63,288 nucleotides of DNA, filler included, from Reticulomyxa filosa (GCA_000512085.1; 10 parts of 10 records of this genome joined end to end with filler, not necessarily neighbours in it); one strand, 5' to 3'; positions 2,058 to 21,600 are shown, numbered from the whole stretch's first letter. Notes: a model not told the origin generated them from the sequence alone. Program-made: numbers and translations.

Positions 2058-3267
2058 ATGTCAAAAGCTTCGCTCCTGTTTATCCTTAGCATATTATTTT
2101 TTGCTGGATCATTGATATACTATGTCAACCTCTATCAAGATTACAAAGGTAAGAAAGAAAAGAAAACGAAAGAAGAGCTTTCTTGAAATTGCAAAGCGTT
2201 GAATGTGCGCAGGAAGTGGAGAAAAGCGTACACCGTTGGGTGTGAATATGGTGCGTTATCACCTCAGCTTTTATCCCAATGATGTTGGAATAAATGACTG
2301 CTTGGCTGGGATGTTCTTGCCCTACTTTATACGTGTTGTGCACACACAACCGTATCTGCGCTGGTTATTTAGTGCCTTCATGTCAACGACTAAATGGCAA
2401 GAAGCAGCAATGGTGATGGCACCGCGCTGGCAATTTTTTGACGACCTACTAAAAAATTCAGTCGAAAAAGATGACATCAGACAAATTATTTTGCTAGGTG
2501 GTGGATATAGCACCCAAATTCTAAGGAATAGCAAACTATTGGAAAGAAACAAAGTCACAGTGTTTCACATTGATCTACCAAAGCTCACAGAGTCGTACAT
2601 ATCCACAGTCAATTCCTTTTTGTTGGGAATAAATAATGCATCAGAGTCATCTGACACTTTATCTGATATTTGTCCATTGGACAATATCAACATTCCAAAG
2701 ACTTCGCATGACATTGCAATTGAATATTGGAAAAATTATGTCAAATTTATTTCTGGTTTGTTTATTTTTCTTTTTTTCTTTTTTTTGACCAAACTATCTT
2801 CTTTTTGACTTAAAGGCGATCTGAACACTGACTGGGAGAGCAAAGTTGTTCCTGAATTGCTTGGTCTGGGATTGAATATTAACACTGAAAAAATACTCAT
2901 CATTTTTGAAGCGGTAGCACAATATCTCCAACCACAAGCCAATGAGAAAATTTTTGAATTTATTGCACAAAAATGCCCAAAAGGGTCTAAAATTGGCTGG
3001 ACCAGTTTTACTCGGGATAGTACCACTGGAAAAACTCGCGCTGATATTTTAAAAAACATTGGAGAGCCTGTGCTGTTTTCATTAGACTCCCAAACTCAAG
3101 TTGAAGAATGGCACAAAAGGTTTCGGTTATCTATCAAGGAATGCATTACCTCCGCAGACCTGATTATGCAAAGATTAAATAAGTATTTTTTGAAAAACCA
3201 TGAAAAAAAAATTGAATCACACACGAGATATATTATTGCCGAGAAGTTAGACATACCCACTGTATAG
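2058..3267 (+). CDS. SAM-dependent methyltransferase, leucine carboxyl methyltransferase (LCM)/ML2640-like family, with N-terminal hydrophobic anchor; 3 exons
   Basis: Exons 2058-2148, 2213-2755 and 2816-3267 join in frame via GT-AG introns. Motifs RWQFFDDLL, QIILLGGGYST and IIFEAVAQYL match LCM-family patterns. N-terminus MSKASLLFILSILFFAGSLIYY is hydrophobic. Confidence 0.8.
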
Positions 3268-3662: not shown

Positions 3663-5853
3663 TCATGTCAATCCAAACAACTTTTTCCATCCTTTTTGTT
3701 TCGTACGTGCTCCGTTCAATCCTTTTTCTTCCAAGATCGATTTACTGCCACCAAACCCTGGCACAAGTCCACACGCATAAAAAGATTTATTTGAAAATAT
3801 TGTTTATATTTTTTGTTTCAAAACTCATTTGAATTTTTGCTGGCTCCGGGGGTCCTGACGCTGATGCTTCGTTCCCTTGTGGTGACTCGTCTCCATTGAA
3901 GAATGTTTTTTGTTGTTCAGACGAGTACGAACCTGACGCCTTACGATTATGTTGCATTGTGCTAGGATTATCATTGTTTCCATTTTTGGTCATGTTTGTT
4001 TTGGGGCCAGAAATTACTCGGGTATTTGGACTCAGCAAAATGGATCTTAAATTGTTTTGAGATGCATCTGCTTGCGATTCTAACCGGAAATGTTCAATGC
4101 CTGCTCGAGATTTTTCAATGATATCTTGCATACGCATCATGGAGACTTGTCGTTGTTTTTCCACAAACTTTTGAGAAAACTGACCGATTGGACAGCAACA
4201 ACCAACAGCGAAGAATAGATAATTATGTACGTGTATATATAATGATGAAAAAAAGGAAGAACGTCAGTATTTTAAAAAAAACAATGGCTTGAATAGAATA
4301 GACCTACCTTATAATCATCTTGGTTCAACGTCTGTCGTTTTACATGCTCAATATCCAACATTGGATCAATGTCATCATCACTATCTGTATCTTCTTTGTC
4401 TTCAGCCTTTTTTGGTAATGAGACATATACAAACAGTCAAATACAAAGTCATGTATATGTTGATCATAATATCCAAATGAGAGAAAGATATTCAAAACTA
4501 TGTGTTTGCGCTTCGATTGCATATTGTGAGCATCTCTCAAAAATTGGCTGCTTTTTGGAATTTCATCCAAATGCTTGAAGACCTCTGGTCTTACATACGC
4601 GTCTTCATCGTCGTCATTGTAGGCATGGACATTGGCTATCTGTCCTGGTGCTAATGCCAGATCGCCATTGTCGTCAAAAGACACATCCATCCTGTGAAAT
4701 CCACCGCCAATATGCGCACCATACTCAGTGTATGCCATAGGTTCATTGGGATCAATGGCAGTGTATGCTTCGAATCGCAACATCGATTTTTGTGCCAACG
4801 TATCTGTTTCAACAAACACCTTTCTGCCTGAGGGCCGGACAATATCGTTGTCGTGTTGATCGGGGGTATCGACGCTTTTGCTGTCTTCCCACGCTAACCG
4901 TGGTCTCGTCTCGTCTTCAGCAGGTGGAGTAACCGTTTCATCCTTTTCCATGGATTCGTTTTCATGCTCGCTTTCCGGTGGAGTGATGTCAGATGAATGT
5001 CTTTTTCTATTCAATACGAGTTTCTCTGGAATCATTTTTTTAACTTTTGTGGAAGAAATGCTCTGTTGCTATCATACCCCAAACATAAATGTTATTATTT
5101 GTCACGTTGTCCCTCGGTCCTTGGCTCAGTTATTTAACACACCTTCTTTTTTTTTGGCTCATAGGGTGGCACTATATCCATCGGCGGCGTTTCGGCAGGA
5201 GAAGGAGTTTGAGCTTGAGACTGGGGTGTCCCTGACGAATTCGAAGTCTGCTGCCGCAGGGAGCCTTTGTCCTTTTCCGAGTGTTTTGACGACTTTTTTT
5301 GTAAATTTCCAAATGCGATTTGATGTGACTTAAGCTCACGCGACTTATCCTCATCTTGCTGAAACAAATTTTCTTCTGCCATTGGTGCGATCACATCCTT
5401 TTTTTGTCATCAAACAAGTACAAAATATGCAAATTCACAAAAAACTGAACGCGCTATAAAAATTAAAAATTAACCGAAGGAGACTTTGTTTGTACCAACG
5501 ATGGAACGGAGGAAGGGCCATCTTGGCTATTTTGAGAAAGCACCTTTTGCAATGCGACTGTTTTGTTTTGTTGAGCTTGCAATTTTTGCGCCTTGCGCGT
5601 TTGTTCGAGATCTGGTTTTGCTGCAATCGTGTGTCTTTTTTGTTCTGCCATCTGGACGTTCAGATCATTGGCACTGTTAGCATCGACAGCCAAGGAAAAC
5701 CGCAGGCTGAGTTTTTGGTAAGCTGTTGCGTTTGTTGTCGTTGTTCAAGGGTGCCTGCAAATTACGAGTGCTACTTGTCTCGCCACCACTTTTGTTGGAA
5801 ATGGAGCCCCGGGATAACACGTTGGGACCATTTTGCACTGTCTTTTTAGCCAT
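3663..5853 (-). CDS. Hypothetical multi-exon hydrophilic, low-complexity protein
   Basis: Consecutive minus-strand ORFs separated by intron-like tracts. The last junction joins in frame to RFGGSKSILEEK...KKLFGLT* (stop 3663-3665). One apparent indel near 5700. Confidence 0.55.
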
Positions 5854-6174
5854 TTCTTCAAAGTTTTTAGGCATTAAATTTTTGTTTGGAGTGCTTAATG
5901 CCGAAGCTAAAAAGTATGATCTGTGAGGTTCGTCTAAAATTGTAAATAGCTTGAGCATCATTTGCACTCGCCAATCCTGTCCTTGTCCTGCTCCTTGAAC
6001 AGGCAGATAAGGCCATCTGTTCACACAAACACATATGCATGCTTGTGTTTTTCTCGAATTATTGCTATGTTTGTGTCTCGGTTGTTTTTTTTTTTTTTTT
6101 ACTCTCTTTTGTGTCACGTTTCAAACTTGAAAGATCTTTGTTTTTGGAATGTCAAATTGCTGTTTGTATCCGCG

Positions 6175-9100
6175 TCAATGTACGTCCATTTGAGTGATTG
6201 TTGGTCTCTGTTGATATCAATGGCATAAGTCAAATAAACACACGCACACATACACACACGTATATATGTATATAATGCTTTAGGCTCGTTTAAGTACTCA
6301 ATTATGTATGACAATAATAAAAGGACATTGCAGACTAAACAAAATGGCTCCGTGCTCTTCAAATAATTTGTCTAATTCATCGGCTCTATCTTTTACATAC
6401 AAAAAGTAGTCATCGACAGTTTCAATTCCATTGTCCTTCTTCTCTTTACTATCATTCAATGCGTAATCTAATAATCGCAACGTACGTTTCCAAAAGGCCG
6501 GCCAGTGACCCGAAGTTTCCATCCATTGCGCGAGCTCTTCCATGAATTTTTTCTCATTGGCATTAATTTCAGTGGTATCAAATGAGAATATCATAACGAT
6601 CAAATGAGCATTGTCATTGTCAAACAAATCCGGTAAAAAGGTAAACTCGTGCATTTCCAATACTCGCAATACAAAGTCTTTCGGACCACATGACAAATCC
6701 CGTTCAAATCTTTGAACGGACATTGCTGTTTTGCTCTGCTTGATTTGTTCGTCAGGCATCAAAAGATGAACAAACCTTCGACGCAATTTCCTGGAAGGCG
6801 ACAACACGACAATGTTCAAGGCTTTGTCTGGCTCGGCATTTATCCATGAAGTCTGTGTGTTTTCAGATTGTGGATCACGGTTTACAGTTTCACAGTTCAA
6901 AGTGTTGTCCAATACAAGACAAATAAGAAGACAAACAAACAAACAAAAACACTCCAATAACATCGTAGTCATAGTCTTGGGTCGGTGTGTCGGTCTGATC
7001 TTCTCCGTTGTCTTGGAGTTGCACAATGTCCGATATTTGGCTTTGTTTCGATTGATGTTTGCTTTCAATTGTATCGGGTGCGTTGATCTGTCCTATCGCT
7101 GCTGGTTCATTGCCATCATTTTCATCTTCATCCGTTTCATCATTTTCTAAAGCGTGTTCCAACGACGCGATTTTCATTTCCAGTTCTTTTCCAGCTAAAG
7201 ACATTTGGACAGTATGTTTTAATTGCACAATTGCCTGTCTTGCCTGCTCTCGTTTCTGTCTTAATTTGTCGTCCTCGCTTGCAAACTGTACTTGTCCATC
7301 TGTTATCTCCTCTGTCTTGTTTTCTTGTTTTGTGTCGTCGATCGACGCTGTTTTCATTTGCGAGTCTCTACTTTCGACTGACATGGCCACAGCTTGATCT
7401 GGCGCTTTGATTTTCTCTTCATGTTTAGCTTTTTCATTTTCGTTACTTATTTGCGTTGCTTTTTTTTTTTTAAAGTTATGAATATATTTATTTTTTTCAT
7501 CGTGCACATTTGTACCTGTATGTGTATCTCTTTGTAAATGGAACATGCACGTTAACTCGGCACCACTGGTTTTGGAGACACGCCCTCGACAGCATTGGAC
7601 ACGCCTGTGACGACAGATATGGATGCAAGAGGTGAGTTATTGGCAAGCGAATGAGGACGAGGCTCGTTGGGACTGCTTGTCGAAGCCGGTTTCATGATCG
7701 CACTTGCAGTGGAATATGCCATAACTAACTGTTGCATAAACACTGGGTCGTTGACTAAAGTCGGATCACGTTTAATTTTTTCTTGCAATATTTGGAGATG
7801 ATTGTTTGTCGTTGAAATATCAATTTGTTGTTGACTAGGAGAGCCGATTAAATCTGTTATTTTGCCAGAGGCACTGAAATAGGTCTGTTCCTCGTCCAAA
7901 GAGGATTGACTAACCATGGCCCTTCTCTATTCACAGCACACAGTCATCAAAGCTAATCTTTCATTCCAATTCCATTACTTTTTTTTTTTGATTGTCGATA
8001 AAAAAAAAAATATTGCAAATAGAAGAGAAACTTGTAATGATTTGATCATTTGTAACAATTTCTTGCGTGCCCCCAAAGTCTCAATTCCAAGCTGAACCAA
8101 GTCCTGTCCGTTTAAATCATCCAACATGTCACCACTAATTTGATTGCGATACAACACACTGGCCCAGTCTTGCCATTTTCCATTTTCTGCTTCGCTTAGC
8201 CAATAGTACACATCATCACTATCCCATGTACGATATTGATGAGGATCCAATGGACGCTTTTCACGTGTGGGACGACTTGGCCGCTCGCGAGGCGGTTCGT
8301 TGCTCTGCTTTTTGTCCTCTGCCTTTTTTTTTTTGAGAAATGGACAAAGAAAAAGAGGGGAGGGAAAAAAAGCTTTCATTTATTGGATTTATGTAAATAG
8401 CATTTGTAACTGGCGGAAGAGGCTGTTGTGATTCAAGATTAGTTTGTGAATTGGCTTGCTCGACTGCTCCCGTTGGCTTGTTGTTTGCGCTTGGCGTGTT
8501 TTTCGAGAAGAAACGGTTCCACAAGGAAGTCTTTTCCTTTTCTAACTGTTCTTCGATTATTGTTTGCTGTTGCTCTATTTGCTTTTGGTTCTCTGCTTTG
8601 GCTTCTTCCAATTGATGTTGCAACAGCTCCGTGTTTAAGTGACTCTGTCGTCGATCATTCGCACGTTGTTCGTTCAAAAGCGTATATTGTTGCTTCATTT
8701 GCTCAAACTCGCGTTGTTGGGTGGAAAGCAACGCCATTTGTTGTTGGTTGGTTTGTTCCAACGCCGCAATTCTTTGTATTTGATCTTCTTGTTGTTTTGA
8801 CATCACTGACAGTTCTTCACGTGCCGAATTTTGTTGTAATCTCGCCAAGAACAGTTCGTGCTCTTTTTCAATAAACTAAAAATACAAGTGTATGTACATA
8901 TATGTGTATACGTCTTTATATATTTATGTATGCATATATACATATGTATATGTATGTACATATATATTTTTTTTAATCAGTTGTTTGACAAAACAGTTCG
9001 AAGATGCTCTGAATTGTGATCGCAACGTTGGATAATTTCTTTTTTCACATCTCCAAGTTGAGAGTTGATTTCTTGTTCCAGTTCTGCCATTCTGTTTTGC

Positions 9101-11185
9101 AAATTTACAATTTGCTGCAGCACTTGGTTATACTGATCGCGTATATCCTGCGAGCTGTTATTTGTTTCTAATGCTCCCTTGGCCAACAAACACATTCAAA
9201 TGTGTTCGAGAGAAACGACAGCGATGGGCCTTTTTTAATACAAAGATGTGATGTATGAGATGGTCAAAAATTAACTTTCAAAGTTGTTGCCGACGTCATC
9301 AAATGTGTCAATTGTTGCGTGGCTTCCGCCTTGAGATGCAAGTATTCCTTCAAATGGTCAAATTTGTCGGCCAGCCAAGCTTGTACCTCTTTGATAATAG
9401 CCCAGTCTGTGTCACTCAGTCCGACCATCAATCTTTTACTTTCATTGTCATTATCGTTGTCATTGTCCTTGTCTTTGTCATTGTCATTGTCCTTGTCTTT
9501 GTCATTGGAAAGTACGGAGAGCACACTTGAGCGCGCTTGCAGTGAAGGATTAACGTCCGGGGAAAGATGTTGCTGTGCATTCGCAAGTTGTTTTTTCAAT
9601 TGATCCAATTCGGCTCGCAGCGATTGCACAACTTGTGGTAGATGACTTGTATCGTCGTTCTTTCGGATATTCAATTTCGGATCTACACGAATATTTTTCG
9701 CACGGTCAGCATATTTCAAAGAGTTGTGTGTTTCTTCCCATTGTATCGAAGATGGGGACAGATTCACAATCATGACCGCAAGGGAATTACCACCAAGTGC
9801 GTCTTGCAACATACGAGTTAACTTGCTGTCGCGATAAGGCACGAATTTTTCTGTTCATTGAAGACCAAAAAAAAAAATACTCCCTTTTCATCTTCGTGTG
9901 AGATTTACGTTATTTGGACATGTTTGTATTGCACATATGCGTATGGAACATAGAATTTTGAAGTAAGACGAAAGGGAGGGGAGACAGCCACGATATGCGT
10001 CTGTCATTCTAAACTGCCATCCACAAGTGCATTGATGCAATTTCCTAAAGCCAACAATGAGCGATTAATATTGGAACCCTCCCTTTGGTTTCCTTGATTG
10101 CTGGCCACAGTTCCCCTTTCAGATCCGGCCAAGTCGATCATATTTAATTTTCCGTTCATTATTTTATGACTTTGTTCGTCTGTTTTTGGCTTCGTTTCGA
10201 CATAAATTTGCAATATTGCATGGGAGCGAGAGGACGTTTCATTCATCAGTGTGGCTTCGGTAGTTCGTCGACGGTTCCCAACCTCTAATAATCGTATTAC
10301 TTCTTCTGATGTGCCAGCTGGAACTAGCTTTACTCCGGACACAACAACGCCCTTTTTTTTTTTTTTTTTTTTTGAGGAAAAAAAAGAAAATGCTCCACTT
10401 AAATGAGTAAAGTTTGAAAAAGGGGAAGGAGAAAAGCCAAGGGGGGGAAGAGGGAAAACTTTGGTTGGTGATTCTCGTAATTTCACGACAGCTCTTTCTT
10501 TGCTCATCAGATCCCGTATTTCTTCGTTGTAAATTTCCATAAATGCAATCAAAATATTAATTTCATAGTGAATCTTATTTTTGTTTGCTAAGTGGAACAG
10601 GTCTTTCAATGTACATACCATAATTCCTGGCTCATTTTTGTCGCCTACCATTGTATGGGTTTTCCCTGCTCCTGTTGCTCCATATGCAAATACTGTCGCA
10701 TTATACCCTTCCACAATTCTTCTCACTACGTTTCGAGATGTATTTTTGTATATTTCTTGCGTGCCCACTGTTTCGTCAAATGCATGGTCAAATGCAAATT
10801 TACGCTCTCTTTTTTTACGGCTTTTTTTTGTCGTTTTTTGTTACAGTTTTATATATTATTTTCATGTTAGCTCTTTTTTAAATATCCCTTCCCATTTTGT
10901 TTTATCAGGTGTTTTATTAATAAAACGTACTTCTTGCTTGGATCTGATAAAATCACGTACTTCTGCTCGACTACGCTTACCACGCTTTCATATCCTTTCT
11001 TTTTTTCGTGATCAAATAGTGGTCGAACTCTTATGGACACCTGTTCAAACACACAACCACAGGTCCGTGTTCTCATATGCTTGAACGCAAATAGTATGTT
11101 TACACACATTGAAGGTCTCTTTTTGCACGCCGAGCTCTTCTTCTGCTTTGGGCTCAGTTGGTTCATCTTCTTGAGCTTCGTCCAT
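6175..11185 (-). CDS. Kinesin-8 (KIF18/KIF19-like) motor + coiled coil + SAM domain + degenerate P-loop GTPase-like C-terminal domain; 12 exons
   Basis: Motor motifs [55 protein letters not shown] and [10 protein letters not shown]. All 11 GT-AG junctions checked by hand stay in frame through to the SAM domain ([11 protein letters not shown]...[13 protein letters not shown]) and on to a stop at 6175-6177. Confidence 0.85.
9442..9506 (-). repeat. Coding hexamer repeat encoding (ND/KD)n in the kinesin stalk
   Basis: ttgtca/ttgtcc/ttgtct tandem units translating as [21 protein letters not shown]. Confidence 0.85.
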
Positions 11186-11804
11186 AGAAAAGAGTCAGAA
11201 TGCTATATTTCTAAACCCCTTTCTCTAACTTCTCAAACTTCGCGGAACACAGAAACTTTGTTTGTTGAATCTGCTTGTAAGATATGTACTATACAATTTA
11301 AATTGCGGCTAACACGAAATATAGGTTTTTTTTAAACAAATGGCAAGTAACAAGAGATAGCTACAAACATTGTGGAAATATCTGTTTGGAGTCCTAAGCG
11401 CTCGGCCAGTGCTTTGTTTACACTTTGATGGATAATTGCTGAGCATTTTTGTGAATTTAAAGACCCAAAAGTAAAACAAATTAGGCTACTTGGCAAGTTA
11501 TTAGACTAGATGGCTAGTTGATTAGTAAATCAAGTAAAAACAATACAAGAAAATGCTACAACGAAAACATCAAACCAAACCACTAAGATACACTTCCTTT
11601 ACACACAAAAAAAGGAATCAAGGTCACAAAATAATTTTTCATTTTATAATAAAACGAAAAAAAAAAATAAATAAAACAAAATAATAAGAAAAAAACATAA
11701 AAACCGTAGCTATACATATACACCAACACTACAAAAGTCAATACAATGTCTACACATTTTGGCATCTCCAAACAAATTACACCTACCTTGATGGTTCAAG
11801 TTAA

Positions 11805-14800
11805 CTACTTTTCGATGGCTGCTTGAATGAGGGCAAGACGTTTTGGTGGTCTAAAAAGCAACACAACAGCGAATTGTGCAAACACGGATTCGCATATACA
11901 AGACGTACACAGAGAAATATATCGATATATTGCACACAGAAATAACGATGGAAGGAGCAGATGTACCCAACTGGTACTAATAGTGTTTTCAACAGAAGGT
12001 TTAATACTAGTTTGCTTCTTTGTTTGAGGAGACTGATTTCCTGAAGGGCTATTGGAGAAAGCGCTCAAATTAGAAAAGGGAGGCAACAAAAACTGGCGTT
12101 GTTGAACGGAAGTGTCTTGCAACGACCAAGAATTCTCTAATGTTGGTAATGGTTTTGGTGTTTCGGTATTGGGAATTTGCTGCAGCGAACTTTGTGTACG
12201 CACTTGTATATGGGGCAAACCCGTGAAGTTCATTGGTTGATTGGTAGGCAATGTGTTTATTTCTGTTTATTTATTACGTTTTTTTTTTAAATGTATTTTG
12301 TTAGACAATGAAATGTATCTATTTTCGTGAAGTAAAACAGACTTACTTGGGCACATGAACATGGAACCCAAAAACATATTGTTATTCATGGCATTGGAAC
12401 TTGTCGTGGACACAATGGGGGTATTAATCATTGTGAAATTTTTGGGATTGTTCCAATTTGCTTCTGTCTCTGTGACTGCCATGGCGAGATTGGCTTGCAA
12501 CAAAGGACCAAGCATCAGTCCACTTTCTTGTGGTTGGTGTTGTTGCGATACCAATGACTGCGAATGGGCCCGAGGAAAGCATAGGATATCGTTCATTGAT
12601 TGTAATAGCTCAAGGACTGTGCGATGACCATACAATCTGGGCTCCAAATACGCTTTGTATCGTCGCGCAAACTCATTTTCAAATTCCGTCAGCGACAATA
12701 TTTTTTGTTTGTTATCGACTTCATTGTCCGATGACGTATTTTCTTGTCCACTTTTCGCCGTGGAATCAGGAGAATTAAAGATTTTCAATATTTTCCATTT
12801 CAGTTCTTTCATTGGAATTCGATGCATTTTCTGTTGCGGACATGTTTACAACACATATGACGATATACATACATCTCACGTTAAACGTAGAGTGTAAATA
12901 TTATACAATGTATATACAAATATGTATACGCATTTTGTACAAAAAAAAAAATCCTTTGATGTAGAATCTAAACTGGAGTAAGAACAATTCTTTCAATAGG
13001 ATGGCGCTTAATTTGCAAAAGCTTGGGATTTTTGGAGACTAATTTCGTGATCTCAGGGCCATCCACACGAAATTGGAATTTACGAAACAGCCTCGTTTGC
13101 ATTTGTGCCACAGTCAATCCAGACGTTTGATGCGCAGCTTCGAGGACAGCTTCCAATAACTCGTGCGAAGAAGGCCGATTTTGTTGATGATTCTTCTATT
13201 TTCATAGAGAAAGAAAACAAAGCGTTGTTTTGTGTTGTCCATAAGATGTAACAAAGTGTTTCTGCTTTTTTTTTTTACTCTCAAAAAAAAAAAAAAGATT
13301 GAAAATAACAACAAAATTTTTTGAATATCCTCCCCCTCCTTTTTTTTTGTCTCCTTTCCGTTAACGTACCACTCTTTTACGATCAATGAAAGGCCTGACA
13401 TCAATTGTTCGACCACGGATCTCAATGGGAGAACACGCGACCAATTTTTGGGCTTGTTGTGCGTTCTCTACCTTCACAAATGACCACCCGTAGTTGCGAT
13501 AACTGATACCCTTGCAGTCTGCCACTTTGACATCATACATTGCCAATGCATCTTCTAACTCTTTCACCGACGTTCCGTAAGCAAATCCACCCATGAATAC
13601 CGTTCGATCGTCTTCCTGTAACAACCGAGAACATAAAAAAAAATAATTTTCAAGGAGGTGAATACAAATAAACAAAAAAACTCACATCTTTTATTGATCC
13701 CTTTTCTTCTTCTCGTTTCCAATTAACTTCGCAAAGTGTTTTGATTGACGCACTTACGTCCTCTCGGCACTTCGCACAAATTAATTCAAACAGCGGCCTG
13801 TTCTTTTCGTAATGTGCTTCAAAATTTGGAGCCAAGCGAAATTGACTGATCATAAACTTGAGCGAGTTGCAGCTACTGCGCAACCCACTGCGTAAGACGT
13901 TGCGCGAAAAGTTGGCCTCATTTCGAACATGTGACGCATGTTGCAATTGCAATTGTTTTTGCTCTTGGTTTAACTTTGGATCGTTAATTTTTTTTAATAT
14001 CCGGTTGATTACTGGAGAAGAAGCATTCAAAGGCATTCTAAATAGTTGTCGAAATTCCCTCTCCAACTCTTCAGTGGAAATTGGTTTTTGGTGATGAATC
14101 AATAATGCAATGAACAGCTCACGATAACCAATTGCGGACGACAACACCTTTTTTTTTAATAAAAAAAAATGCTTTTTAATTCCATCCCAAAAAAAAGAAA
14201 AAAAAAAAAAAACAATACAAACGCCATGGCAGTTGTGTCCATTTGGATTTAGTTGCGCACTTTCCGCTGGCTGATAAACTACAGACCGTTCCACTCTGCT
14301 GACAACAACATCACAATTATTTACCACAAACTGGTGCGGATCCGGTAAAATTTGTGACAACCTTTGATCCATTTCCATTTCAACCCAACGACAACATGTG
14401 TTCTTTTTTTTTTCAAAAAAAAAAAAAAAGAAAAAGACAAGCCAGTCATTTTCAAAACACACTTGTATCCACAAAAATTAGAGATCACATCGTTCAAAAT
14501 ATCGGACGAAATTCCACAAGGAAACAACCGAATGATCGCGTTAATATGTCCGCAAATGGCTTCAGTAATTTCTGGAATTGAATATTCTTCAAGTATACTT
14601 TGTACAGCCTGATAAGTTCCGACAGTGACAAACAACAACAAAAAAAATGCACTGTTTTGGTCCATTATTTTTGGCTTGTATGGTTTCACAAAGTGGGATC
14701 AACTTGATGGTGGAGCGTCAGCAAGTTACCACGATTAACACAAGGAGTGATCAACACATTTCGATGGTTAAACAGCAAATACTCAATGTTATCGTCCATT

Positions 14801-15460
14801 GGCAAATCATCCTTTGTTATCCGTTTATACTCCACTTCCAGTTCGTTGTCGTATACGCCATTTGGATGATGGGACAGCATCATCAGCATTAAATTTCGCA
14901 ACACGCGACGTACCACATGCGACGTCGCAGCATTCATGTTCGAATTTAATAGGGTGTCATTGGCCATAACATTGTTCTGTGCGGTTACGTCACGATCGTC
15001 ACTCTTTTCTTCTTTTTCTTTGTCATCTTTCGCTTCTGCTTCCTTGGTCTTGGCTCCCTCGTTTTTCACACCTTCAACGCTCCCCTGCGAGTTTTGCGGA
15101 TACTTTGCAATATTCACCTCTTTGTCATCCCATCCATCATTTCTATTGCGATTGCTGGTCTCATCAACAAACTGCACACCATCGTCTTCGTCACCAGTGT
15201 GGTCAGTATTCGAATCAAATGCTTCACAAAACAACTTCATAAATTGCCTATTTTACCCGTAAATTTTGCTCATGAACCAATTAAAAATTTTAGAAACAAA
15301 AAAAATAGTTTCTTCTTGTACACATCACAAACCCTTTTTCTGCTTCGACGCTGCTTGATTCAGAATTTGAATTTGCAGATTCAAATACTCGCCCCAATTG
15401 GTCCATCAATTTCTTGTATTTGCCGTCAAATACACGCCCGCTCGAATTCTCTTCCTTCAT
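11805..15460 (-). CDS. RNA-binding protein with several LOTUS/OST-HTH-like domains and one RRM (3' end uncertain)
   Basis: RRM: TVFMGGFAYGTSVKELED...GWSFVKVEN...IRGRTIDVRPF. LOTUS-like segments: LSLTEFENEFARRYKAYLEPRLYGHRTVLELLQSM, LSHHPNGVYDNELEVEYKRIT and HHQKPISTEELEREFRQLF. ATG at 15460, first junction in frame. Confidence 0.7.
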
Positions 15461-16556
15461 GTTGAAAACACTCTTTAACGAAACTAACTAACTGCAATGT
15501 TGCTCTAAGACAGCTAACAACAAAACACAAGTTGTCAAAAACTAGTCTACTCACAAGATAAAAAAATGTTAATAGCCATTTACCTAAAAAAACCTTCCTT
15601 TAAGGAAATTTTTGTTGCAAGATCTCTGCGAGGCAGTTTTCAAGAGAATTTAAAAAACTAGCTGGCAACCCAGAAAGACTTGAAAGTTTCGGCTTCATTA
15701 CCTACCTTTTTTTTTGAGTGGTTGTTTTGGCTACAGTCTTGATGTAACTTAAAACGTAGTTAGCAAATTTAGACAACAACTTGTTTGTTTCTGTCGATCA
15801 TTTGTAATATTTCTTTCGTTATTTTAGTTGATCGAAGACAACTTTAGTTGAGTCTTCATTGACAAAATAGTCATTGTCACAATACTGTTAATTCACTCAA
15901 AATAGGAAACAGAGATGCACAATTAGATTACAGCCATTTTAATTATAGTATTTTAACGGATAGTGACTTAATAACAAAAATTATATTTGTCATTCGCAGC
16001 AGAAACACTTTATTTTGAAAATTGTTACAAGCATAATTTGATGCCTGTATCTAATCATAATAAGATTAACTGTGTTGTGTATGTAGAGCAAGATCCAACT
16101 ATTTGGTGTCAAGGCTCAGGCGAATCTTGACCTTTTTCTTAAAACTTCTCTACAAACTTACTTCTCACTTTCTAAGATTGGACATGCGTTAAGTGAAAAT
16201 TGTGTTTCTCGTTGCTTTCTTGCAAATAAATAAATAAATAAAAGATCGCAAATGGTGTTTCTGTCCTTTTTTTAAATAAAAAACAATAACTATCAAGAAA
16301 TTGCGTCGAAACGCGAAATGAAAAGTACTCGTACATTGAACGCTCCAAATTTCATACAATATAAGTGATATTGCTGTCGTGTTCAAAATTAAATCTGACA
16401 AAGGGGGGGAAGACTATTCGAAAATACAAGCCAGCCTAAATTTGACAAAGCTTTCAAAGTGGACAAGTGTGTTTTCACTAGCCCAACTTTTTTACAATAG
16501 CTATTGTAACGCTGTCTTTTTATTTTTGGTATCATTTGTTTAGTTATTTAAAAATA

Positions 16557-16683
16557 CAGTATGTTGCAAAGAAAACTGAACGCCTAAAACAATATCATAT
16601 GCTAAATGTTGATTTTTCATTGAGAAAATCAATTATCATCATAAGATATGTTTTAGGCGTTCAGTTTTCTTTGCAACCTACTG
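16557..16683. mobile_element. 127-bp Tc1/mariner-type MITE (foldback) with TA TSD
   Basis: TA|CAGTATGTTGCAAAGAAAACTGAACGCCTAAAACA...TGTTTTAGGCGTTCAGTTTTCTTTGCAACCTACTG|TA. Near-perfect TIRs of ~35-40 bp, CAGT/ACTG termini. A second copy starts at 37999. Confidence 0.88.
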
Positions 16684-18667
16684 TAACAAAGATTTTTTCC
16701 AACATTAGAATTAGGTCACATATTGTCCAAAAGAACCTGTGACTACTATCGTTTACTGCGATATAACATATTTATATTGACATTGTTTGTACAATGCAAA
16801 TTGATTTTAATAATCGATAAGCTAGTTTGCTAAGTCACACAAATAAATAATAACTCATGTGATGTACCACTTACGCAAGTAGTAATCTTGGTACAAGTTT
16901 TACAATTGATATATATTTGTATTGCAACATATACAAACAATATGGATCACTAGTAATATTATATTTAATCATAGTGAACAGAGTTCATATTTTTATAATA
17001 TTTTTTGAAGTAAATCAGAACAAAAAAGAGAGTTGACACATAAAACGGCACTTTATGAAGATAATTATTTTCTCCATAAAAAACAACATTTATCAAAATT
17101 TTTTTATTTAAAGAAATACACTAATCGTGTAATTTTTAAATATAGTTTTGGTTTTTCATTTTATATTTGGAGTTTTTTCAAAAATTTGAATCTTTCATTT
17201 ACTTTTTTGAAATTTTCGAAAAAGTTGACAGTAGCGTTTTTCTAGTATTTATGAAATTTGACAATTCTTTTTTAGCATTTTAGATTTTTTTTTGTGATGT
17301 CAATATTGATTTTTTTTAACATTTTTGTTATTTTGTCATTGTCAAAATGTGAAAGCATGTTGATGGATTTGAAAAGACATGATGTGCAAATGACAATTAG
17401 TTAATCTAGTTATATCAAATTTAAAGTTACTTATAAGTGGTCAGTAAAAGATATTTAACTATTAATAAACCTTACAATAAACGTCAGTAAACAGAATCTT
17501 GATATTGTTAGATTTATCGAAGAAACAAAAATTTAAAAAACTTGCATTTGCTATAAAGTACCAAAGTTGTGTTTATGACTATTGGAAAAAAGTATTATTT
17601 TCAGAAAGTAAAATTTGATTGATTAAGCATTTTAGTTTATGCATGCTTTGTGTAAGACTGTAATATTGAAGTGTGAGAGTTCAGATATATAAAGAAATAT
17701 AATATGACGAAATGATAAAAAGCGTTAATTGCTGTTTGTAATACAAACATGACTGTATTTTTCAGCAGACAACGCAACTTGCCATAACTCGGAAAAAATT
17801 ACTACGTTATTAATAAAAATGAAAAATAAAAGTATATATAAACTCGCCATACTTAAACAATGTAGAAAAACTTTTGTGGATCGTAAAAGCAAAAATACAC
17901 AAAAAAAGGTCCATTTGAAAACAAAACAGCTTTGTAATTAATTTGAAATATAGTGTTAAAATATAGAGCATACATTTGTGAAAATTTAATCATATCTATG
18001 CCAAAAGGATACAATGTATCATAAAAGTAGATTTAATCAGTTGGTAAAAATTTTAAGTAAAGCTAAAAAACTTCAATTACATTTTAAAAATCAAATGAAG
18101 ATTTAATTTTTTGATATAAATGAAAAACAAAAACTATATTTAAAAATTACACGACTAGTATATTTTTTTACATTGTTTTGGCATTGAATAGACTAGTTTG
18201 TAAGTAATAACCAATATAATTATCTATTTGTTTTTCATTGTATTCTAATTCAGACTTTACGTTCTTCACAATACATTTTTTTTATTTTTTTAAGAAAATT
18301 TTCAAAAAATGAAAAAAACATTATGCTTTTATTGAAAACCGAATATACTTTTAGGTTCTTCATGGTGTGCGTATTCATTTAAAAAAATATTTTAAGAAAA
18401 TATTAATTTTTCATAAATAAAATTGAAAACTTGGACACGTCGAACTTCGGTAACTTTTATTATCGTAACTATCACAAAACTGAAGCCGAACATTTTTTTT
18501 GGATGAAGTTCTTAATTATATTGGAACACATTATTGATTTTTGGAAAGGAGCCAGAGAATTAGATGCAAATGTTTAGATATTAAAAACTTTTCAAAAGGT
18601 CCTAACAGTGGATTTTTATTTTGATCTTAGGCAAGTTTAAAAAAGCAATTTTTCTTAAATTTTCAAC

Positions 18668-21600
18668 TTATTCATCGTCCATATATTCACTTTCGGCTTC
18701 ACTCTCTACCACATAGTCTTCGTCATTTTTCTCGTTCCAATCAATGTCAGAGCTGACACTCTCATTTTCAAGTGGTTCCTCTTCTTTTTCCATATTCTTT
18801 GAAGAGCTTGATTGTTCATTTTTAGTTGCTCGGTTTCGCAAAGGGTAGGTTTTGTGATTGGCTGCTTCAACATTCGCATCACTCAACACTTTGTTTATCA
18901 AATTTTTAGGAATAGGAGGAATATCTAAAGAGCCAAGATTTGTCATGTCCTGAGAAGAATTAGAAATTGCATGTGAAGGCATAGTCTCAAAGGTTTTATG
19001 AGTATCACCGTTATCAGCTGACTTGTCAGATATTTCAAGCTTTGATTGGTTGTTTGTTTTCAACGGATGGGGGTCTTGACCATTTTGTCTTAATAAAGGT
19101 TGTACAACAAACCATTCCAGAAACACACGCTACAACAATGATCAAAAAAATTGTAATACATTGCGATCTTTTATTGATACAAAAGACACAAAACTGTTCT
19201 AGATTTTCAATTTCGCTTTGTAAAGTCTGAACTAATCCCTCTGCTATATTAACAATGACAGATCCTTCCTCGTTGAAAAGTTTTGCATTTGTTTCTATAA
19301 GTTTAACGTCGGATAGCACACTCTTTCGTTCATATTCACAAGCATGCACATTTCTCTTTTTTATTTGTTATTGATAACGTCTCAGAAAATTTCATACAAA
19401 CCTGCGTTGAACGATACCACTGGAAGCGTAATCTTTGTCTTACTCTATCCAAACACATGGGCAGCGGCACAACATCAGGATAGGATGGAAAATCATCTTC
19501 GTTGACATCATGTAAAAAATCTTTGAATCTATCGTCATCTGCAGCTCTTTCTACTACTTCTAACAAGGATTTGGTATCTTTTCAAATAAGCAAACATCAA
19601 TTATATTGAAGAAAAACGAATTCAATGAAGGAAAAAAAAGCAATCAATACAAGTGAATACCTTTTGTCTCGAGCTTGGATGGGACAAATATCTCCTCGAG
19701 TTTTTGTTGTACACTAGAATTGCTGCGGTATAAATTCCATGGGTTGCACTTTTTGGGAAATGTTTCTGAATAACCCCAATGGCAACAAATACCTTGCCAT
19801 ATTGGAACATTGGATTGATCTTTGATGACCTCTTCGATTTTGCCAGTTACGGACCCTCTAAATTGTATTACATAGCATGAAACAAGAGACAAAGTCAAGA
19901 AAAGACAAAGAGAGAAGTGGTTGTTACCCTTTATGATCTACGGCAATGACCACATCACCTTCGCTCCACTGTTGCAACAACCCAACAAAATATTGCCATG
20001 CAGGAACAATAAATGGAGACAAATCTTCCGTGTGGTGCATACAAATTTCAAAACAGTCTACTTCTTTTGGTTCCGTATTGTAATATGGCAATTGTTGAAT
20101 GTCAATGTGCAAAATCTTTGATTTTGAATTGTTTTGGTCTTCTCCAGCAACGTCATTATCAACAATCGATTTAGTTTTAGCTTTCGCCTGCGTTCGACTG
20201 TTGTTAATATTTTTTCGTCGAAAATTGTACTCTTTCGATTGATTATGATCTGACAAGTTTTCTTGATTCGTGGTTGTACCGTCACTTTCTTGGCATGGAA
20301 CAGTGATAATGTCAGTAGTTACATTGACTCTCAAATGTTCACTGGCCTTGCATGGCCTTAATCGCAATCTTGCAAATGTCCTTTTTACATAATTGTCACC
20401 ATTTTCGCTATTTGAACAAAGAACAGAGCAATATGATCGTCTGTATTTAATCTCTTCAATTATACAGCACATGGGTGTACTCCATGTCGTTGAAGGGCAT
20501 TTGTAATCGTTGTTCAATTGTTTCATTTCATTTTTGTCTTCGTTTGCATCACTATCTGATGCATCGGCGTTTCTTTGTTTTTCTTCGTTTGCAATATTTA
20601 GGTCATCTTGAGGAATTGTTTCAAGTTCAGCGTTTTCATAAAATGCTTTGTGTCCAGAAGGTATATATACCACCACGTCCCCAACCTGTGGCACATAACA
20701 TTGAGCTGAATTTGGAGTAGATATATTTGTATTGAGGCCTGAAGCGGTCCCGTTTTCTTGTTTTCCAGATCCTTGTTCTTGTAGCAACCACTGACAGTCG
20801 TAATTCTCCTTGTTGTCAAAGTTATTGCGCTCTTTATAGTCGCTATTTAGTCTCCTTTTCTTGGGTGGAGGAGTAATTGATGAAGATTGATGATTTTCTT
20901 CTCTTCGATGTTTTCGAGAACTTCTTCTCAATGCTCGATCTTCGCGTAATCTTCTGCTGTTGTCATTCGAATCTGCCAAAGATGGATATTTTTCATCGCT
21001 ATCGGGCAATTTTTGCGTGTGATTGTTTGTCGATCTTAAGTCATACCTATGTTGGTGATTATCGCGATCGTTTGATAAGAGGTTACCTTCGTCTTCAAAG
21101 ATGCCGATACTCTCATCTCCACTTTTTTTCAATGAATCAACAGAGCTTTCGCTTCTCCAATATTGCCGATGTGAAGCAATATCATGAGTAGCTGATGAAT
21201 TTCTGCCCCTACCTCTGCCTCTACCCCTACCTCTACCTCTACCTCTACCTCTGCCTCTTCGACTTCCTCGACCGCGATCGATGCTTCGAATTACGTGTGA
21301 ATATTGTTCTTCACTGTAAACACTACTTTCAAAAGTACTTTCTTCTTGACTTGAGTCCGATTCCAGTATGTTCATTTTTTCTCTTTCAACAGGCGCATTA
21401 AAATCGCTATCTGCGTCACTGAGGTTATTGTAATCTTGACCCGACGTGGCATTGCTGTTGCGATCAATTTCCGTAATTGTGGCCGGATTTGTAATTTGTT
21501 CATGTGAAAATGATTCATGATATAAGGGCTGTCTTGTATTGGCAACAGATGTAATGTGCTGCAGACGCTGTCCGAGCTGACGAAGAGTCAGTGCATTATT

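What the first reader, a model, noticed from the sequence alone, without database searches (positions are those of the whole stretch)
6175..11185. Kinesin-8 fused to a SAM domain and a pseudo-GTPase (AIG1/Toc34/septin-like) tail
Seen: ORF fragments that look like separate genes join through 11 in-frame GT-AG junctions into one protein of roughly 1300 aa: motor, coiled coil, SAM, linker, alpha/beta domain. The tail ([21 protein letters not shown]...LRVLEMHEF...[11 protein letters not shown]...EKKFMEEL...[10 protein letters not shown]) follows the strand/helix spacing of paraseptin GTPases (hhhhG-x4-GKS, DTPG, IWK-x-h), but the P-loop and DxxG are erased. Known: kinesin-8s regulate microtubule plus-end length, and SAM domains mediate polymerisation. 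I know of no kinesin-8 with this tail. Inference: an oligomerising motor or scaffold possibly tied to reticulopodial microtubule dynamics.
Basis: partly seen in the sequence, partly recalled or inferred. Interest (0 to 1): 0.82.

Follow-up and report, generated by a model that had tools for sequence, protein, structure and literature searches.

The report
Foraminiferal kinesin-8 with SAM and pseudo-GTPase
A single large gene of the foraminifer Reticulomyxa filosa, split into three genes in the public annotation, encodes a microtubule motor of the kinesin-8 type. Its long tail carries a SAM domain and a GTPase-shaped domain that has lost all nucleotide-binding motifs, an architecture conserved across Foraminifera and not described before.

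Summary
The window is R. filosa contig ASPP01003200.1. On the minus strand, GT-AG introns join the ORF fragments into one open frame. Pfam finds a kinesin motor in exons 3-5 and SAM in exon 8. The motor's best matches are kinesin-8s (KIF19, Plasmodium kinesin-8, KIF18A, Kip3).

The "tail" has no Pfam or PDB sequence match. An AlphaFold model built on 18 homologous rows (pLDDT 75.6, core about 90) has a G-domain fold. All six Toc33/Toc34 entries rank first (Z 11.6-12.4), and every other top hit is a GTPase. The P-loop site reads LSPxxxLR[KR] in every member that covers it, and DxxG and NKxD are also absent. It is a pseudo-GTPase.

Corrections: the domain is not C-terminal. The stop at 6298 lies in an intron. 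The gene runs on to 3787, giving 18 exons, 17 introns and 1897 aa.

The single-gene reading is backed by a 1902-aa Nonionella stella protein with the same collinear architecture, and by six further loci with the same order. The deposited annotation splits the locus into three genes.

No RNA data exist for R. filosa itself, and function is inferred only.

The parts
3787..11185 (-). Whole gene. It has 18 exons and 17 GT-AG introns (38-164 nt) and encodes 1897 aa. Exons: 11185-11108, 11040-10931, 10808-10460, 10351-10015, 9850-9276, 9177-8995, 8875-8411, 8322-8032, 7926-7557, 7458-6962, 6852-6341, 6207-6127, 6016-5701, 5651-5475, 5397-5143, 5062-4445, 4406-4308, 4167-3787.
   Evidence: Frame check: 5694 nt with a single terminal stop. 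Exons 11-18 are identical to deposited model P0001 from residue 322 onward. Exons map collinearly on the N. stella protein P0137.
9690..11040 (-). Kinesin-8 motor domain (exons 2-5, model aa about 27-344). It carries [13 protein letters not shown] and DLAGSE.
   Evidence: Pfam PF00225 with E 3e-37, 8e-35 and 6e-20 for exons 3, 4 and 5, covering profile positions 41-327. The best PDB matches are kinesin-8s.
8411..9689 (-). Neck and stalk. It is Q/E/L-rich and presumed coiled coil, with a DKDN repeat encoded at about 9440-9520. The conserved motif [13 protein letters not shown] sits at the start of exon 7.
   Evidence: Exon 5 aligns to L002 ORF1 through its last residue. Exon 7 maps to P0137 599-724. 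The motif is shared with L002, L003, P0008, P0018 and P0137. The coiled-coil reading was inferred from composition and not computed.
8032..8232 (-). SAM domain (exon 8, model aa about 730-796).
   Evidence: Pfam SAM_2 at 1.2e-9 (38.6 bits, cut-off 20.5) and SAM_1 at 2e-9 (38.1 bits, cut-off 23).
6962..7926 (-). Linker (exons 9-10). It is mostly low-complexity and acidic, with the conserved motif [29 protein letters not shown] and a short helix-like stretch, [18 protein letters not shown].
   Evidence: The motif matches P0004 277-314 at E 4e-5, downstream of SAM in the same uninterrupted ORF. Exons 9 and 10 map to P0137 873-936 and 1028-1094.
5824..6852 (-). Pseudo-GTPase (G-domain-like) module across exons 11-13, model aa about 1086-1350. 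Secondary structure order: b1 ALNIVVL, a 3-residue loop SPS in place of the P-loop, a1, b2-b3 hairpin, LEMHEF in place of DxxG, b4 LIVMIFSFD, a3 with HWPAFW, b5 TLRLLD in place of NKxD, a4, b6 WTYID. An extension follows: KWPYLPV..GQDWRVQ..LDEPHRSYF..TPNKNL..NGP.
   Evidence: AF2 on alignment A4: pLDDT 75.6, pTM 0.76, residues 1-120 at about 90. VIA-align gives Toc33/34 Z 11.6-12.4, rmsd 3.5-4.4, 173-185 residues aligned. All Foldseek hits are GTPases. ESM Atlas gives AIG1/MMR_HSR1/septin at TM 0.5-0.57. No Pfam or PDB sequence hit.
3790..5823 (-). Long C-terminal region (exons 13-18) that is poorly conserved and low-complexity. A conserved short motif, KQRQVSMMRMQDIIEKS, is encoded at about 4096-4170.
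   Evidence: Composition is. The motif is shared with P0004 (E 0.035), P0014 (E 0.002) and P0137 (exon 18 to 1765-1866, E 1e-6) at the same relative position.
6208..6340 (-). Intron 11.
   Evidence: The donor is gtttag at 6340 and the acceptor ...atcaacag ends at 6208. Relatives read ...LF(x)5-8...LKW..I(D/E)T without interruption.

Best explanation
Window positions 11185 to 3787 (minus strand) are one 18-exon gene of Reticulomyxa filosa. It encodes a protein of about 1900 aa in this order:
- a short acidic N-terminus;
- an N-terminal KIF19-like kinesin-8 motor with intact ATP and switch motifs;
- a long presumed coiled-coil stalk;
- a SAM domain;
- an acidic, presumably disordered linker with one conserved motif;
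- a G-domain-fold module, closest to Toc33/34 of the AIG1/septin 'paraseptin' group, that lacks the P-loop, DxxG and NKxD motifs and is therefore a pseudo-GTPase;
- a conserved extension, KWP.IP...DW...EP..SYF;
- a long low-complexity C-terminus with one conserved short motif.

The architecture is shared by Foraminifera: Nonionella stella at full length, Globobulimina as a fragment, three R. filosa paralogues, and unnamed marine contigs. The public R. filosa annotation cuts the gene into three models at introns 5 and 8.

Likely mechanism (inferred, not shown). The stalk dimerises the motor, which walks to microtubule plus ends and modulates their length as kinesin-8s do. The SAM domain and the nucleotide-free G-like domain act as protein-protein interaction or self-association modules. 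They would set higher-order assembly, cargo or regulator binding, comparable to the Ras-like domain of the dynein light intermediate chain.
For: Gene structure:
- There is one open frame across 17 GT-AG introns.
- Junction 1 (FN|VSIRVRPLF) matches the uninterrupted FNVS(I/V)R in L002, P0018 and P0137.
- Junctions 3, 4 and 5 are spanned by the uninterrupted L002 ORF1.
- Intron 6 sits at the same phase-0 site as the only break in L002 (4553-4665) and in L003 (1488-1797), both in frame.
- Junctions 7-12 are spanned by the single 1422-codon L002 ORF2.
- The conserved YDYD..W...LN(I/V)..LSP motif supports junction 10 against the deposited model.

Single protein:
- N. stella P0137 (1902 aa) carries Kinesin at 85-421 and SAM at 780-843, plus the LSPYKSLRK domain and the C-terminal motif.
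- R. filosa exons map on it in order.
- N. stella public data are de novo transcriptome assemblies (PMC8153729).
- The collinear order kinesin, SAM, domain on one strand is seen in L001, L002, L003, L004 and L006. L008 has a kinesin end, a SAM end and the domain start. L005 has SAM then domain.

Kinesin-8.

SAM.

G-domain fold and missing motifs.
Against: - No RNA run for R. filosa could be listed, so no junction is confirmed by reads in this organism.
- Whether EukProt entry EP01083 derives from the transcriptome assemblies is from memory, not from a tool.
- Exon 6 shows no significant similarity to relatives.
- Junction 2 yields a shorter loop 2 than in relatives.
- The fold model rests on a shallow alignment (18 rows, about 12 lineages). 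Sequence identity to any GTPase is only 5-16 %, with no profile hit.
- Toc33/34 leads the next fold classes by only about 2 Z units.
- Nucleotide binding, oligomerisation, coiled-coil formation and any effect on microtubules are untested.
Confidence: 0.82

Rival explanations
1. Three separate adjacent genes, as in the deposited annotation: a 527-aa kinesin (11185-9264), a 337-aa SAM protein (9195-7975) and a 1124-aa protein of unknown function (7917-3787).
For: This is what GCA_000512085.1 carries. Each model has an ATG and a stop. No R. filosa RNA data are available to decide directly.
Against: The gaps between the models are 68 and 57 nt. Each model's stop lies inside a GT-AG intron that restores the frame. 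In L002 the stretches matching both deposited gene boundaries lie inside uninterrupted ORFs. N. stella has all the parts in one 1902-aa protein. In the paralogue L006 the depositors' own 884-aa model overlaps the stretch matching the kinesin motor's C-terminal part and runs through SAM. The deposited kinesin model lacks the conserved IRVRPL strand and retains intron 3.
Confidence: 0.04
2. The G-like domain is an active nucleotide-binding switch that uses non-canonical residues, not a pseudo-GTPase. For example, R/K of LSPxRKLRK and the invariant LE and LLD acidic residues could do this job.
For: Basic residues (R13/K14 of the model) lie at the start of helix 1, where the P-loop lysine would sit. 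An acidic residue follows b3 (E58) and another follows b5 (D121), and these are conserved.
Against: The b1-a1 loop is 3 residues long without glycine. From memory of Ras and Toc33, the canonical anion hole is a glycine-rich loop of about 6-8 residues. There is no Ser/Thr after the Lys-equivalent, no DxxG glycine and no NKxD. No GTPase profile detects the sequences.
Confidence: 0.07
3. The G-domain fold is a modelling artefact of a shallow alignment. The region would then be some other alpha/beta (flavodoxin-like) domain, or two unrelated small domains.
For: There are only 18 rows, and many cover just part of the domain. The single-sequence model failed (pLDDT 38). TM-scores to PDB chains are modest at 0.3-0.47. 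Residues 124-130, 175-201 and 253-275 are below pLDDT 50.
Against: The core has pLDDT about 90 and the model has pTM 0.76. The b1-a1-b2/b3 hairpin-a2-b4-a3-b5-a4-b6-a5 order is that of G domains. All 50 best hits in each of three searches are G domains. An independent language-model feature search on the sequence alone returned only GTPase families.
Confidence: 0.07
4. The R. filosa copy in this window is a decaying paralogue, not expressed or not translated as modelled. Only the N. stella-type orthologue elsewhere would be functional.
For: R. filosa has at least three paralogous loci. Loop 2 looks shortened at junction 2. No expression data exist.
Against: All 18 exons stay open over 5.7 kb with canonical splice sites. 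All motor catalytic motifs and all family-invariant residues of the G-like domain are intact.
Confidence: 0.06

Closest known systems
Kinesin-8 family, KIF19 / kinesin-8B branch (KIF19A, Plasmodium kinesin-8B, KIF18A, Kip3)
   Same: The motor is N-terminal with intact P-loop, switch I and switch II. The highest sequence scores are to kinesin-8 structures and to KIF19-named proteins. A stalk follows the neck.
   Different: None of the 120 best-scoring kinesin relatives of 343-1092 aa has a SAM domain. Their tails are not reported to hold a G-domain fold. No paper in the searched library links kinesin-8 with SAM in one protein. This protein is about twice as long.
Toc33/Toc34 and the AIG1/GIMAP-septin ('paraseptin') G domains
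   Same: These are the best structural matches: Z 11.6-12.4, 173-185 residues aligned, all six Toc33/34 entries ranked first. ESM Atlas neighbours carry AIG1, MMR_HSR1 and Septin.
   Different: There is no G1, G3 or G4 motif, and sequence identity is 11-14 %. No Pfam AIG1, MMR_HSR1 or Septin hit was found. There is no membrane anchor. The domain is embedded in a motor protein and carries a family-specific extension (KWP.IP..DW..EP..SYF).
Pseudo-GTPase domains used as scaffolds in motor or microtubule machinery, such as the Ras-like domain of the dynein light intermediate chain and CENP-M (from my own knowledge)
   Same: A G-domain fold without a working nucleotide switch, built into or attached to a cytoskeletal motor complex. 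A DLIC cluster appeared among the language-model neighbours (rank 8).
   Different: DLIC and CENP-M were not among the 50 best structural hits. There is no sequence relationship. Here the domain is fused in cis to a kinesin.
KIF24, a kinesin-13 with a SAM domain (from my own knowledge)
   Same: A microtubule-depolymerising-type kinesin that also carries a SAM domain.
   Different: It belongs to a different kinesin family. As I recall, its SAM is N-terminal to the motor, and it has no G-like domain. This was not tested here.

Membership tests
Kinesin superfamily / kinesin-8 | Kinesin motor domain with P-loop GxxxxGK[ST], switch I SSRSH and switch II DxxGxE | tested here: met
   PF00225 matches exons 3-5 and covers profile positions 41-327. 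[13 protein letters not shown] and DLAGSE lie at model residues about 106-113, 219 and 252.
Kinesin superfamily / kinesin-8 | Motor closest to kinesin-8 members rather than other kinesin families | tested here: met
   In PDB phmmer, all 14 kinesin-8 sequences rank first for the intact relative motor (280-346 bits, against 261 for kinesin-2). The same order holds for each R. filosa exon. The best named database hits are KIF19, 'kinesin 18/19' and KIN-8B.
Kinesin superfamily / kinesin-8 | Placement inside the kinesin-8 clade in a phylogeny with other families as outgroups | not tested
Kinesin superfamily / kinesin-8 | Extended loop 2 typical of kinesin-8 motors | tested here: inconclusive
   Relatives have 18-19 residues between NP(D/E) and (A/K)FD. 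My junction 2 leaves 7 in R. filosa. This may be a modelling or assembly problem.
Kinesin superfamily / kinesin-8 | Plus-end-directed motility with length-dependent depolymerisation or capping | not testable with these tools
   This needs in vitro motility and depolymerisation assays.
SAM domain (PF00536 / PF07647) | Profile match above the curated threshold | tested here: met
   SAM_2 scores 38.6 bits (cut-off 20.5) and SAM_1 38.1 bits (cut-off 23) in exon 8. Both are also found in P0137, and the precomputed Pfam records list them for the products at L002, L003, L005 and L006.
SAM domain (PF00536 / PF07647) | Head-to-tail polymer-forming surfaces | not tested
   No model or assay of the SAM domain was made.
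TRAFAC GTPases, Toc34/AIG1/septin group | G-domain fold (b1-a1-b2/b3-a2-b4-a3-b5-a4-b6-a5) | tested here: met
   The AF2 model gives this order. Toc33/34 score Z 11.6-12.4, and only G domains appear among the top hits. The ESM Atlas gives TM 0.5-0.57.
TRAFAC GTPases, Toc34/AIG1/septin group | G1 P-loop GxxxxGK[ST] | tested here: not met
   The site reads LSPSRKLRR. The family pattern LSPxxxLR[KR] holds in all members that cover it, and the loop has 3 residues and no glycine.
TRAFAC GTPases, Toc34/AIG1/septin group | G3 DxxG and G4 (NKxD or its family equivalent) | tested here: not met
   The sequence after b3 is LEMHEF (family (I/L)Exxxx). After b5 it is LLDYAL (family R(L/M)LDxxL).
TRAFAC GTPases, Toc34/AIG1/septin group | Sequence-profile membership (AIG1 PF04548, MMR_HSR1 PF01926, Septin PF00735) | tested here: not met
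   None of the 18 members gives a hit at E <= 1. The family profile gives no PDB hit at E <= 10.
Pseudo-GTPase (G-domain fold without nucleotide switch) | G-domain fold with loss of the nucleotide-binding or catalytic motifs | tested here: met
   The fold is met and the motifs are absent, as in the rows above.
Pseudo-GTPase (G-domain fold without nucleotide switch) | Demonstrated lack of nucleotide binding or hydrolysis | not testable with these tools
   This needs binding assays on purified protein.

The most novel reading that the evidence does not exclude
Foraminifera evolved a lineage-specific kinesin-8 whose tail contains a new family of nucleotide-free G domains, distantly Toc34/AIG1-like, together with a SAM domain. 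The G-like domains of a motor dimer pair across the former nucleotide face, and the SAM domains link dimers. The resulting multimeric plus-end regulator or microtubule cross-linker would underlie the exceptionally fast assembly, disassembly and sliding of reticulopodial microtubules. It would be a cis-fused analogue of the dynein light-intermediate-chain scaffold.
Probability: 0.2. Interest if true: 0.75.

Novelty: new variant of a known kind. Interest (0 to 1): 0.55.

Why it matters
Foraminiferal reticulopodia show some of the fastest microtubule dynamics and transport known, yet their regulators are almost unstudied at the molecular level. This gene offers a concrete, conserved and lineage-specific candidate. 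It has a KIF19-like length-regulating motor with two added interaction modules.

It also adds a previously unrecognised pseudo-GTPase family. Only 14 cluster representatives were found among 1.84 billion proteins, and all labelled ones are foraminiferal. It is also an example of a G-domain fold fused to a kinesin.

In practical terms, the public R. filosa annotation mis-splits the locus into three genes, so domain-architecture surveys based on it would miss the protein. It also mis-models the kinesin N-terminus.

Tried and rejected
- RNA evidence. The look-up of sequencing runs listed no RNA run.
- The word-index search with the 184-aa exon found nothing. With the family alignment it found only two known members.
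- The search for related loci failed once because the alignment had no conserved stretch. It then found no relative in JGI metagenome contigs.
- The single-sequence AF2 model was useless (pLDDT 38).
- Pfam on the domain and on all 18 family rows gave nothing. The profile against PDB sequences also gave nothing.
- Exon 6 against L002 showed no significant similarity.
- Literature searches found no paper describing this architecture. These covered Reticulomyxa with kinesin, kinesin-8 with SAM domain, and R. filosa genome papers.
- I considered the alternative reading frame used by the deposited kinesin model between exons 2 and 3 ([10 protein letters not shown]...). I rejected it because no GT donor precedes its stop and because it drops the conserved IRVRPL strand.
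It was assembled only inside scripts to count stops and lengths and was written to a scratch file there. All searches used single exons, stored proteins or loci by reference.


Full report
**Origin and setting.** The window is contig ASPP01003200.1 of the Reticulomyxa filosa assembly GCA_000512085.1. Source names on related proteins confirm the organism. The finding lies on the minus strand.

**Checking the observation.** I read the DNA and tested candidate junctions in scripts. Ten canonical GT-AG introns of 67-164 nt join eleven ORF fragments between 11185 and 6298. The result is one frame of 1269 codons with no internal stop.

Pfam scans were run exon by exon by reference.
- Kinesin (PF00225) matched exons 3, 4 and 5 at E 3e-37, 8e-35 and 6e-20. 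Together they cover profile positions 41-327.
- SAM_1 and SAM_2 matched exon 8 at about 1e-9, above their gathering scores.
- Nothing matched the stalk, the linker or the last exon.

An exhaustive HMMER search of 1.84 billion representatives with the 184-aa exon gave 16 hits at E <= 0.001. Fourteen are genuine relatives; the last two are repeat proteins matched only over short repeated stretches. The best hit, P0001 (1124 aa, 99 %), is the deposited model of this very locus. After ...EEHGAI(L) it splices from a donor at 6340 to an acceptor ending at 6208, and continues with [14 protein letters not shown]... and WPYLPVQGAGQGQDWRVQ.... Seven further exons reach a stop at 3787-3789. The relatives read straight through this region, so the stop at 6298 lies in intron 11. 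The complete model has 18 exons, 17 GT-AG introns, 5694 nt and 1897 aa.

**One gene or three?** The deposited annotation has three models:
- a kinesin of 527 aa (11185-9264);
- a SAM protein of 337 aa (9195-7975);
- P0001 (7917-3787).

The gaps between them are 68 and 57 nt, and the first two models end by reading into introns 5 and 8. No RNA run could be listed for R. filosa, so I used comparative evidence.

1. A Tara Oceans scaffold (L002) carries a 624-codon kinesin ORF and a 1422-codon ORF, 113 nt apart. The second ORF holds stalk, SAM, linker, the same domain and the C-terminus in one uninterrupted frame. The stretches matching both deposited R. filosa gene boundaries therefore lie inside uninterrupted ORFs.
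2. The single break in L002 (4553-4665) is a GT-AG, phase-0, in-frame intron. It sits at the site of R. filosa intron 6, just before the conserved (F/L)xxKEHE(L/F) motif. L003 has the same intron at 1488-1797. The R. filosa depositors themselves splice across that site.
3. Kinesin, SAM and the domain lie in the same order on one strand in L003, L004 and the R. filosa paralogue L006. L008 has a kinesin end, a SAM end and the domain start. L005 starts inside the gene and has SAM then the domain.
4. A cluster look-up gave the decisive piece: P0137, a 1902-aa protein of the foraminifer Nonionella stella (EukProt EP01083). It has Kinesin at 85-421 and SAM at 780-843. It also has the LSPYKSLRK domain, the KWPNIP extension and the C-terminal SIMRYQDIL motif.

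R. filosa exons 2-5, 7-11, 13, 15, 17 and 18 map on P0137 in strict order. N. stella public data are de novo transcriptome assemblies (PMC8153729). That EP01083 derives from them is my recollection. P0018, from a Tara 'merc' record, also joins the motor to the ERESELFLAK motif.

Homologues also correct the deposited models. FN|VSIRVRPLF (junction 1) and removal of intron 3 are supported. YDYD|TSW...LNIVVLSP (junction 10) is also supported against P0001. The weak points are exon 6, which has no significant similarity, and junction 2, where loop 2 is 12-14 residues shorter than in relatives.

**Kinesin-8.** Each motor exon scores best against kinesin-8 structures: Plasmodium kinesin-8, KIF19, KIF18A and Kip3. 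For the intact L002 motor, all 14 kinesin-8 sequences rank first, at 280-346 bits against 261 for kinesin-2. The best named database relatives are KIF19, 'kinesin family protein 18/19' and KIN-8B. None of the 120 best hits (343-1092 aa) has SAM. I did not build a phylogeny.

**The alpha/beta domain.** Sequence methods find nothing. A language-model feature search returned only GTPase families (Gtr1/RagA, MMR_HSR1, AIG1, DLIC) at scores of 0.84-0.87, which counts as a lead only. Single-sequence AF2 failed.

With an 18-row alignment of family members (A4), AF2 gave pLDDT 75.6 and pTM 0.76, with the first 120 residues near 90. The element order is that of a G domain: b1-a1-b2/b3 hairpin-a2-b4-a3-b5-a4-b6-a5.

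The fold searches agree.
- Foldseek against the PDB returned only GTPases among its 50 best hits, with 420 matches at E <= 0.001. Pea Toc34 had the best TM-score by query, at 0.44.
- VIA-align against 48,161 representatives put atToc33 first at Z 12.3 (rmsd 3.7, 182 aligned). Arl2 (10.2), EHD4 (9.9) and other G domains followed.
- The second look placed all six Toc33/Toc34 entries at ranks 1-6, at Z 11.6-12.4.
- The ESM Atlas gave AIG1, MMR_HSR1 and septin clusters at TM 0.50-0.57.

The lead of Toc33/34 is about 2 Z units. The class (TRAFAC G domain) is therefore firm, and the subgroup is only probable.

**Motifs.**
- The b1-a1 loop is three residues (SPS) with no glycine. The family pattern is LSPxxxLR[KR] in every member covering it, N. 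stella included.
- After b3 the sequence is LEMHEF rather than DxxG.
- After b5 it is LLDYAL rather than NKxD.

The loss is therefore ancestral to the sampled family. Invariant residues are instead aromatic: HW..FW, KW, WP..P, DW, EP..SYF. I read this as a conserved interaction surface, which is an inference.

The G-like core covers model residues 1 to about 220, with a low-confidence insertion at 175-201. Two more helices follow, to about residue 252.

**Distribution.** Only 14 representative clusters exist in the 1.84-billion-protein library. The labelled ones are R. filosa (three paralogous loci), Globobulimina turgida and Nonionella stella, all Foraminifera. The rest are marine metagenome or metatranscriptome records.

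**Mechanism.** What is shown is the architecture, the intact motor motifs and the motif-less G fold. The following is inferred from established kinesin-8 biology and from the known use of SAM and pseudo-GTPase domains as interaction modules. The motor would be a stalk-dimerised, plus-end-directed regulator of microtubule length. Its SAM and G-like modules would mediate self-association or partner binding. Basic tracts after the domain in relatives, such as the KKKDKKKKKKKKKK tract in N. stella, could serve as a tail microtubule-binding site, as reported for other kinesin-8s (from memory). None of this is tested.

**Comparison and novelty.** The motor passes the sequence-similarity tests for kinesin-8. 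The G-like domain fails the motif and profile tests for GTPase families, so it is a pseudo-GTPase that resembles Toc33/34 in fold only. I found no description of a kinesin-8 with SAM, or of a kinesin with a G-domain fold, in the searched literature. I rate it a new variant of a known kind.

Noticed in passing
window 9264-11185 (deposited kinesin model P0019): The deposited 527-aa 'kinesin heavy chain' model skips the conserved first motor strand (VSIRVRPLF..., exon 2). It also retains the 108-nt in-frame intron 3 as a 36-residue insert ([14 protein letters not shown]...KKKKKKK) and ends in intron 5.
   Followed up: yes
window 10809-10938: Between exons 2 and 3, relatives have 18-19 residues (kinesin loop 2) where my GT-AG model leaves 7. 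The deposited model uses another frame that has no canonical donor before its stop. Possible causes are an assembly frameshift, a non-canonical splice or a genuinely shortened loop.
   Followed up: partly
window introns 2, 3, 7, 9, 14, 16 (for example 10809-10818, 10352-10361, 8323-8332, 7459-7468): Six of the 17 introns end in a run of A before the acceptor AG (aaaaaaaag), not a pyrimidine tract. This may be a feature of R. filosa introns.
   Followed up: no
L005 (ASPP01046982.1) and L006 (ASPP01021897.1): R. filosa has at least two further paralogues of this gene (73-75 % and 68 % identity in the G-like domain) on short contigs. In L006 the depositors' own 884-aa model overlaps the stretch matching the kinesin motor's C-terminal part and runs through the SAM domain.
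   Followed up: partly
L002 4553-4665, L003 1488-1797, window 8876-8994: The phase-0 intron just before the KEHE(L/F) motif is shared by three organisms. The Tara relative has lost all other introns of the gene, and L003 also keeps the R. filosa intron-4 site (NALVDG|[10 protein letters not shown]).
   Followed up: partly
L008 (GCA_024449465.1, contig JAANSR013411546.1, 2207 nt): A 2.2-kb contig of another assembly carries a kinesin motor end, then the last part of a SAM domain with the linker motif, then the start of the G-like domain. The roughly 350-residue stalk is missing between 571 and 723. It could be a deletion variant, a pseudogene or a collapsed assembly.
   Followed up: no
window 9440-9520: A GACAA(G/T)-type microsatellite lies inside exon 5 and encodes a [20 protein letters not shown] run in the stalk. 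On the opposite strand it gives long (LS)n ORFs.
   Followed up: no
window 11583-15460 and 2203-3267: Annotated neighbours are an OST-HTH protein (513 aa) and a 547-aa protein without Pfam hit upstream on the same strand. A leucine carboxyl methyltransferase (LCM) gene lies downstream on the plus strand.
   Followed up: no
window 16000-19000 and 19924-22017: There is an AT-rich stretch (GC 0.24-0.30), and a single 697-codon minus-strand ORF with a (GR)n run and long low-complexity regions.
   Followed up: no
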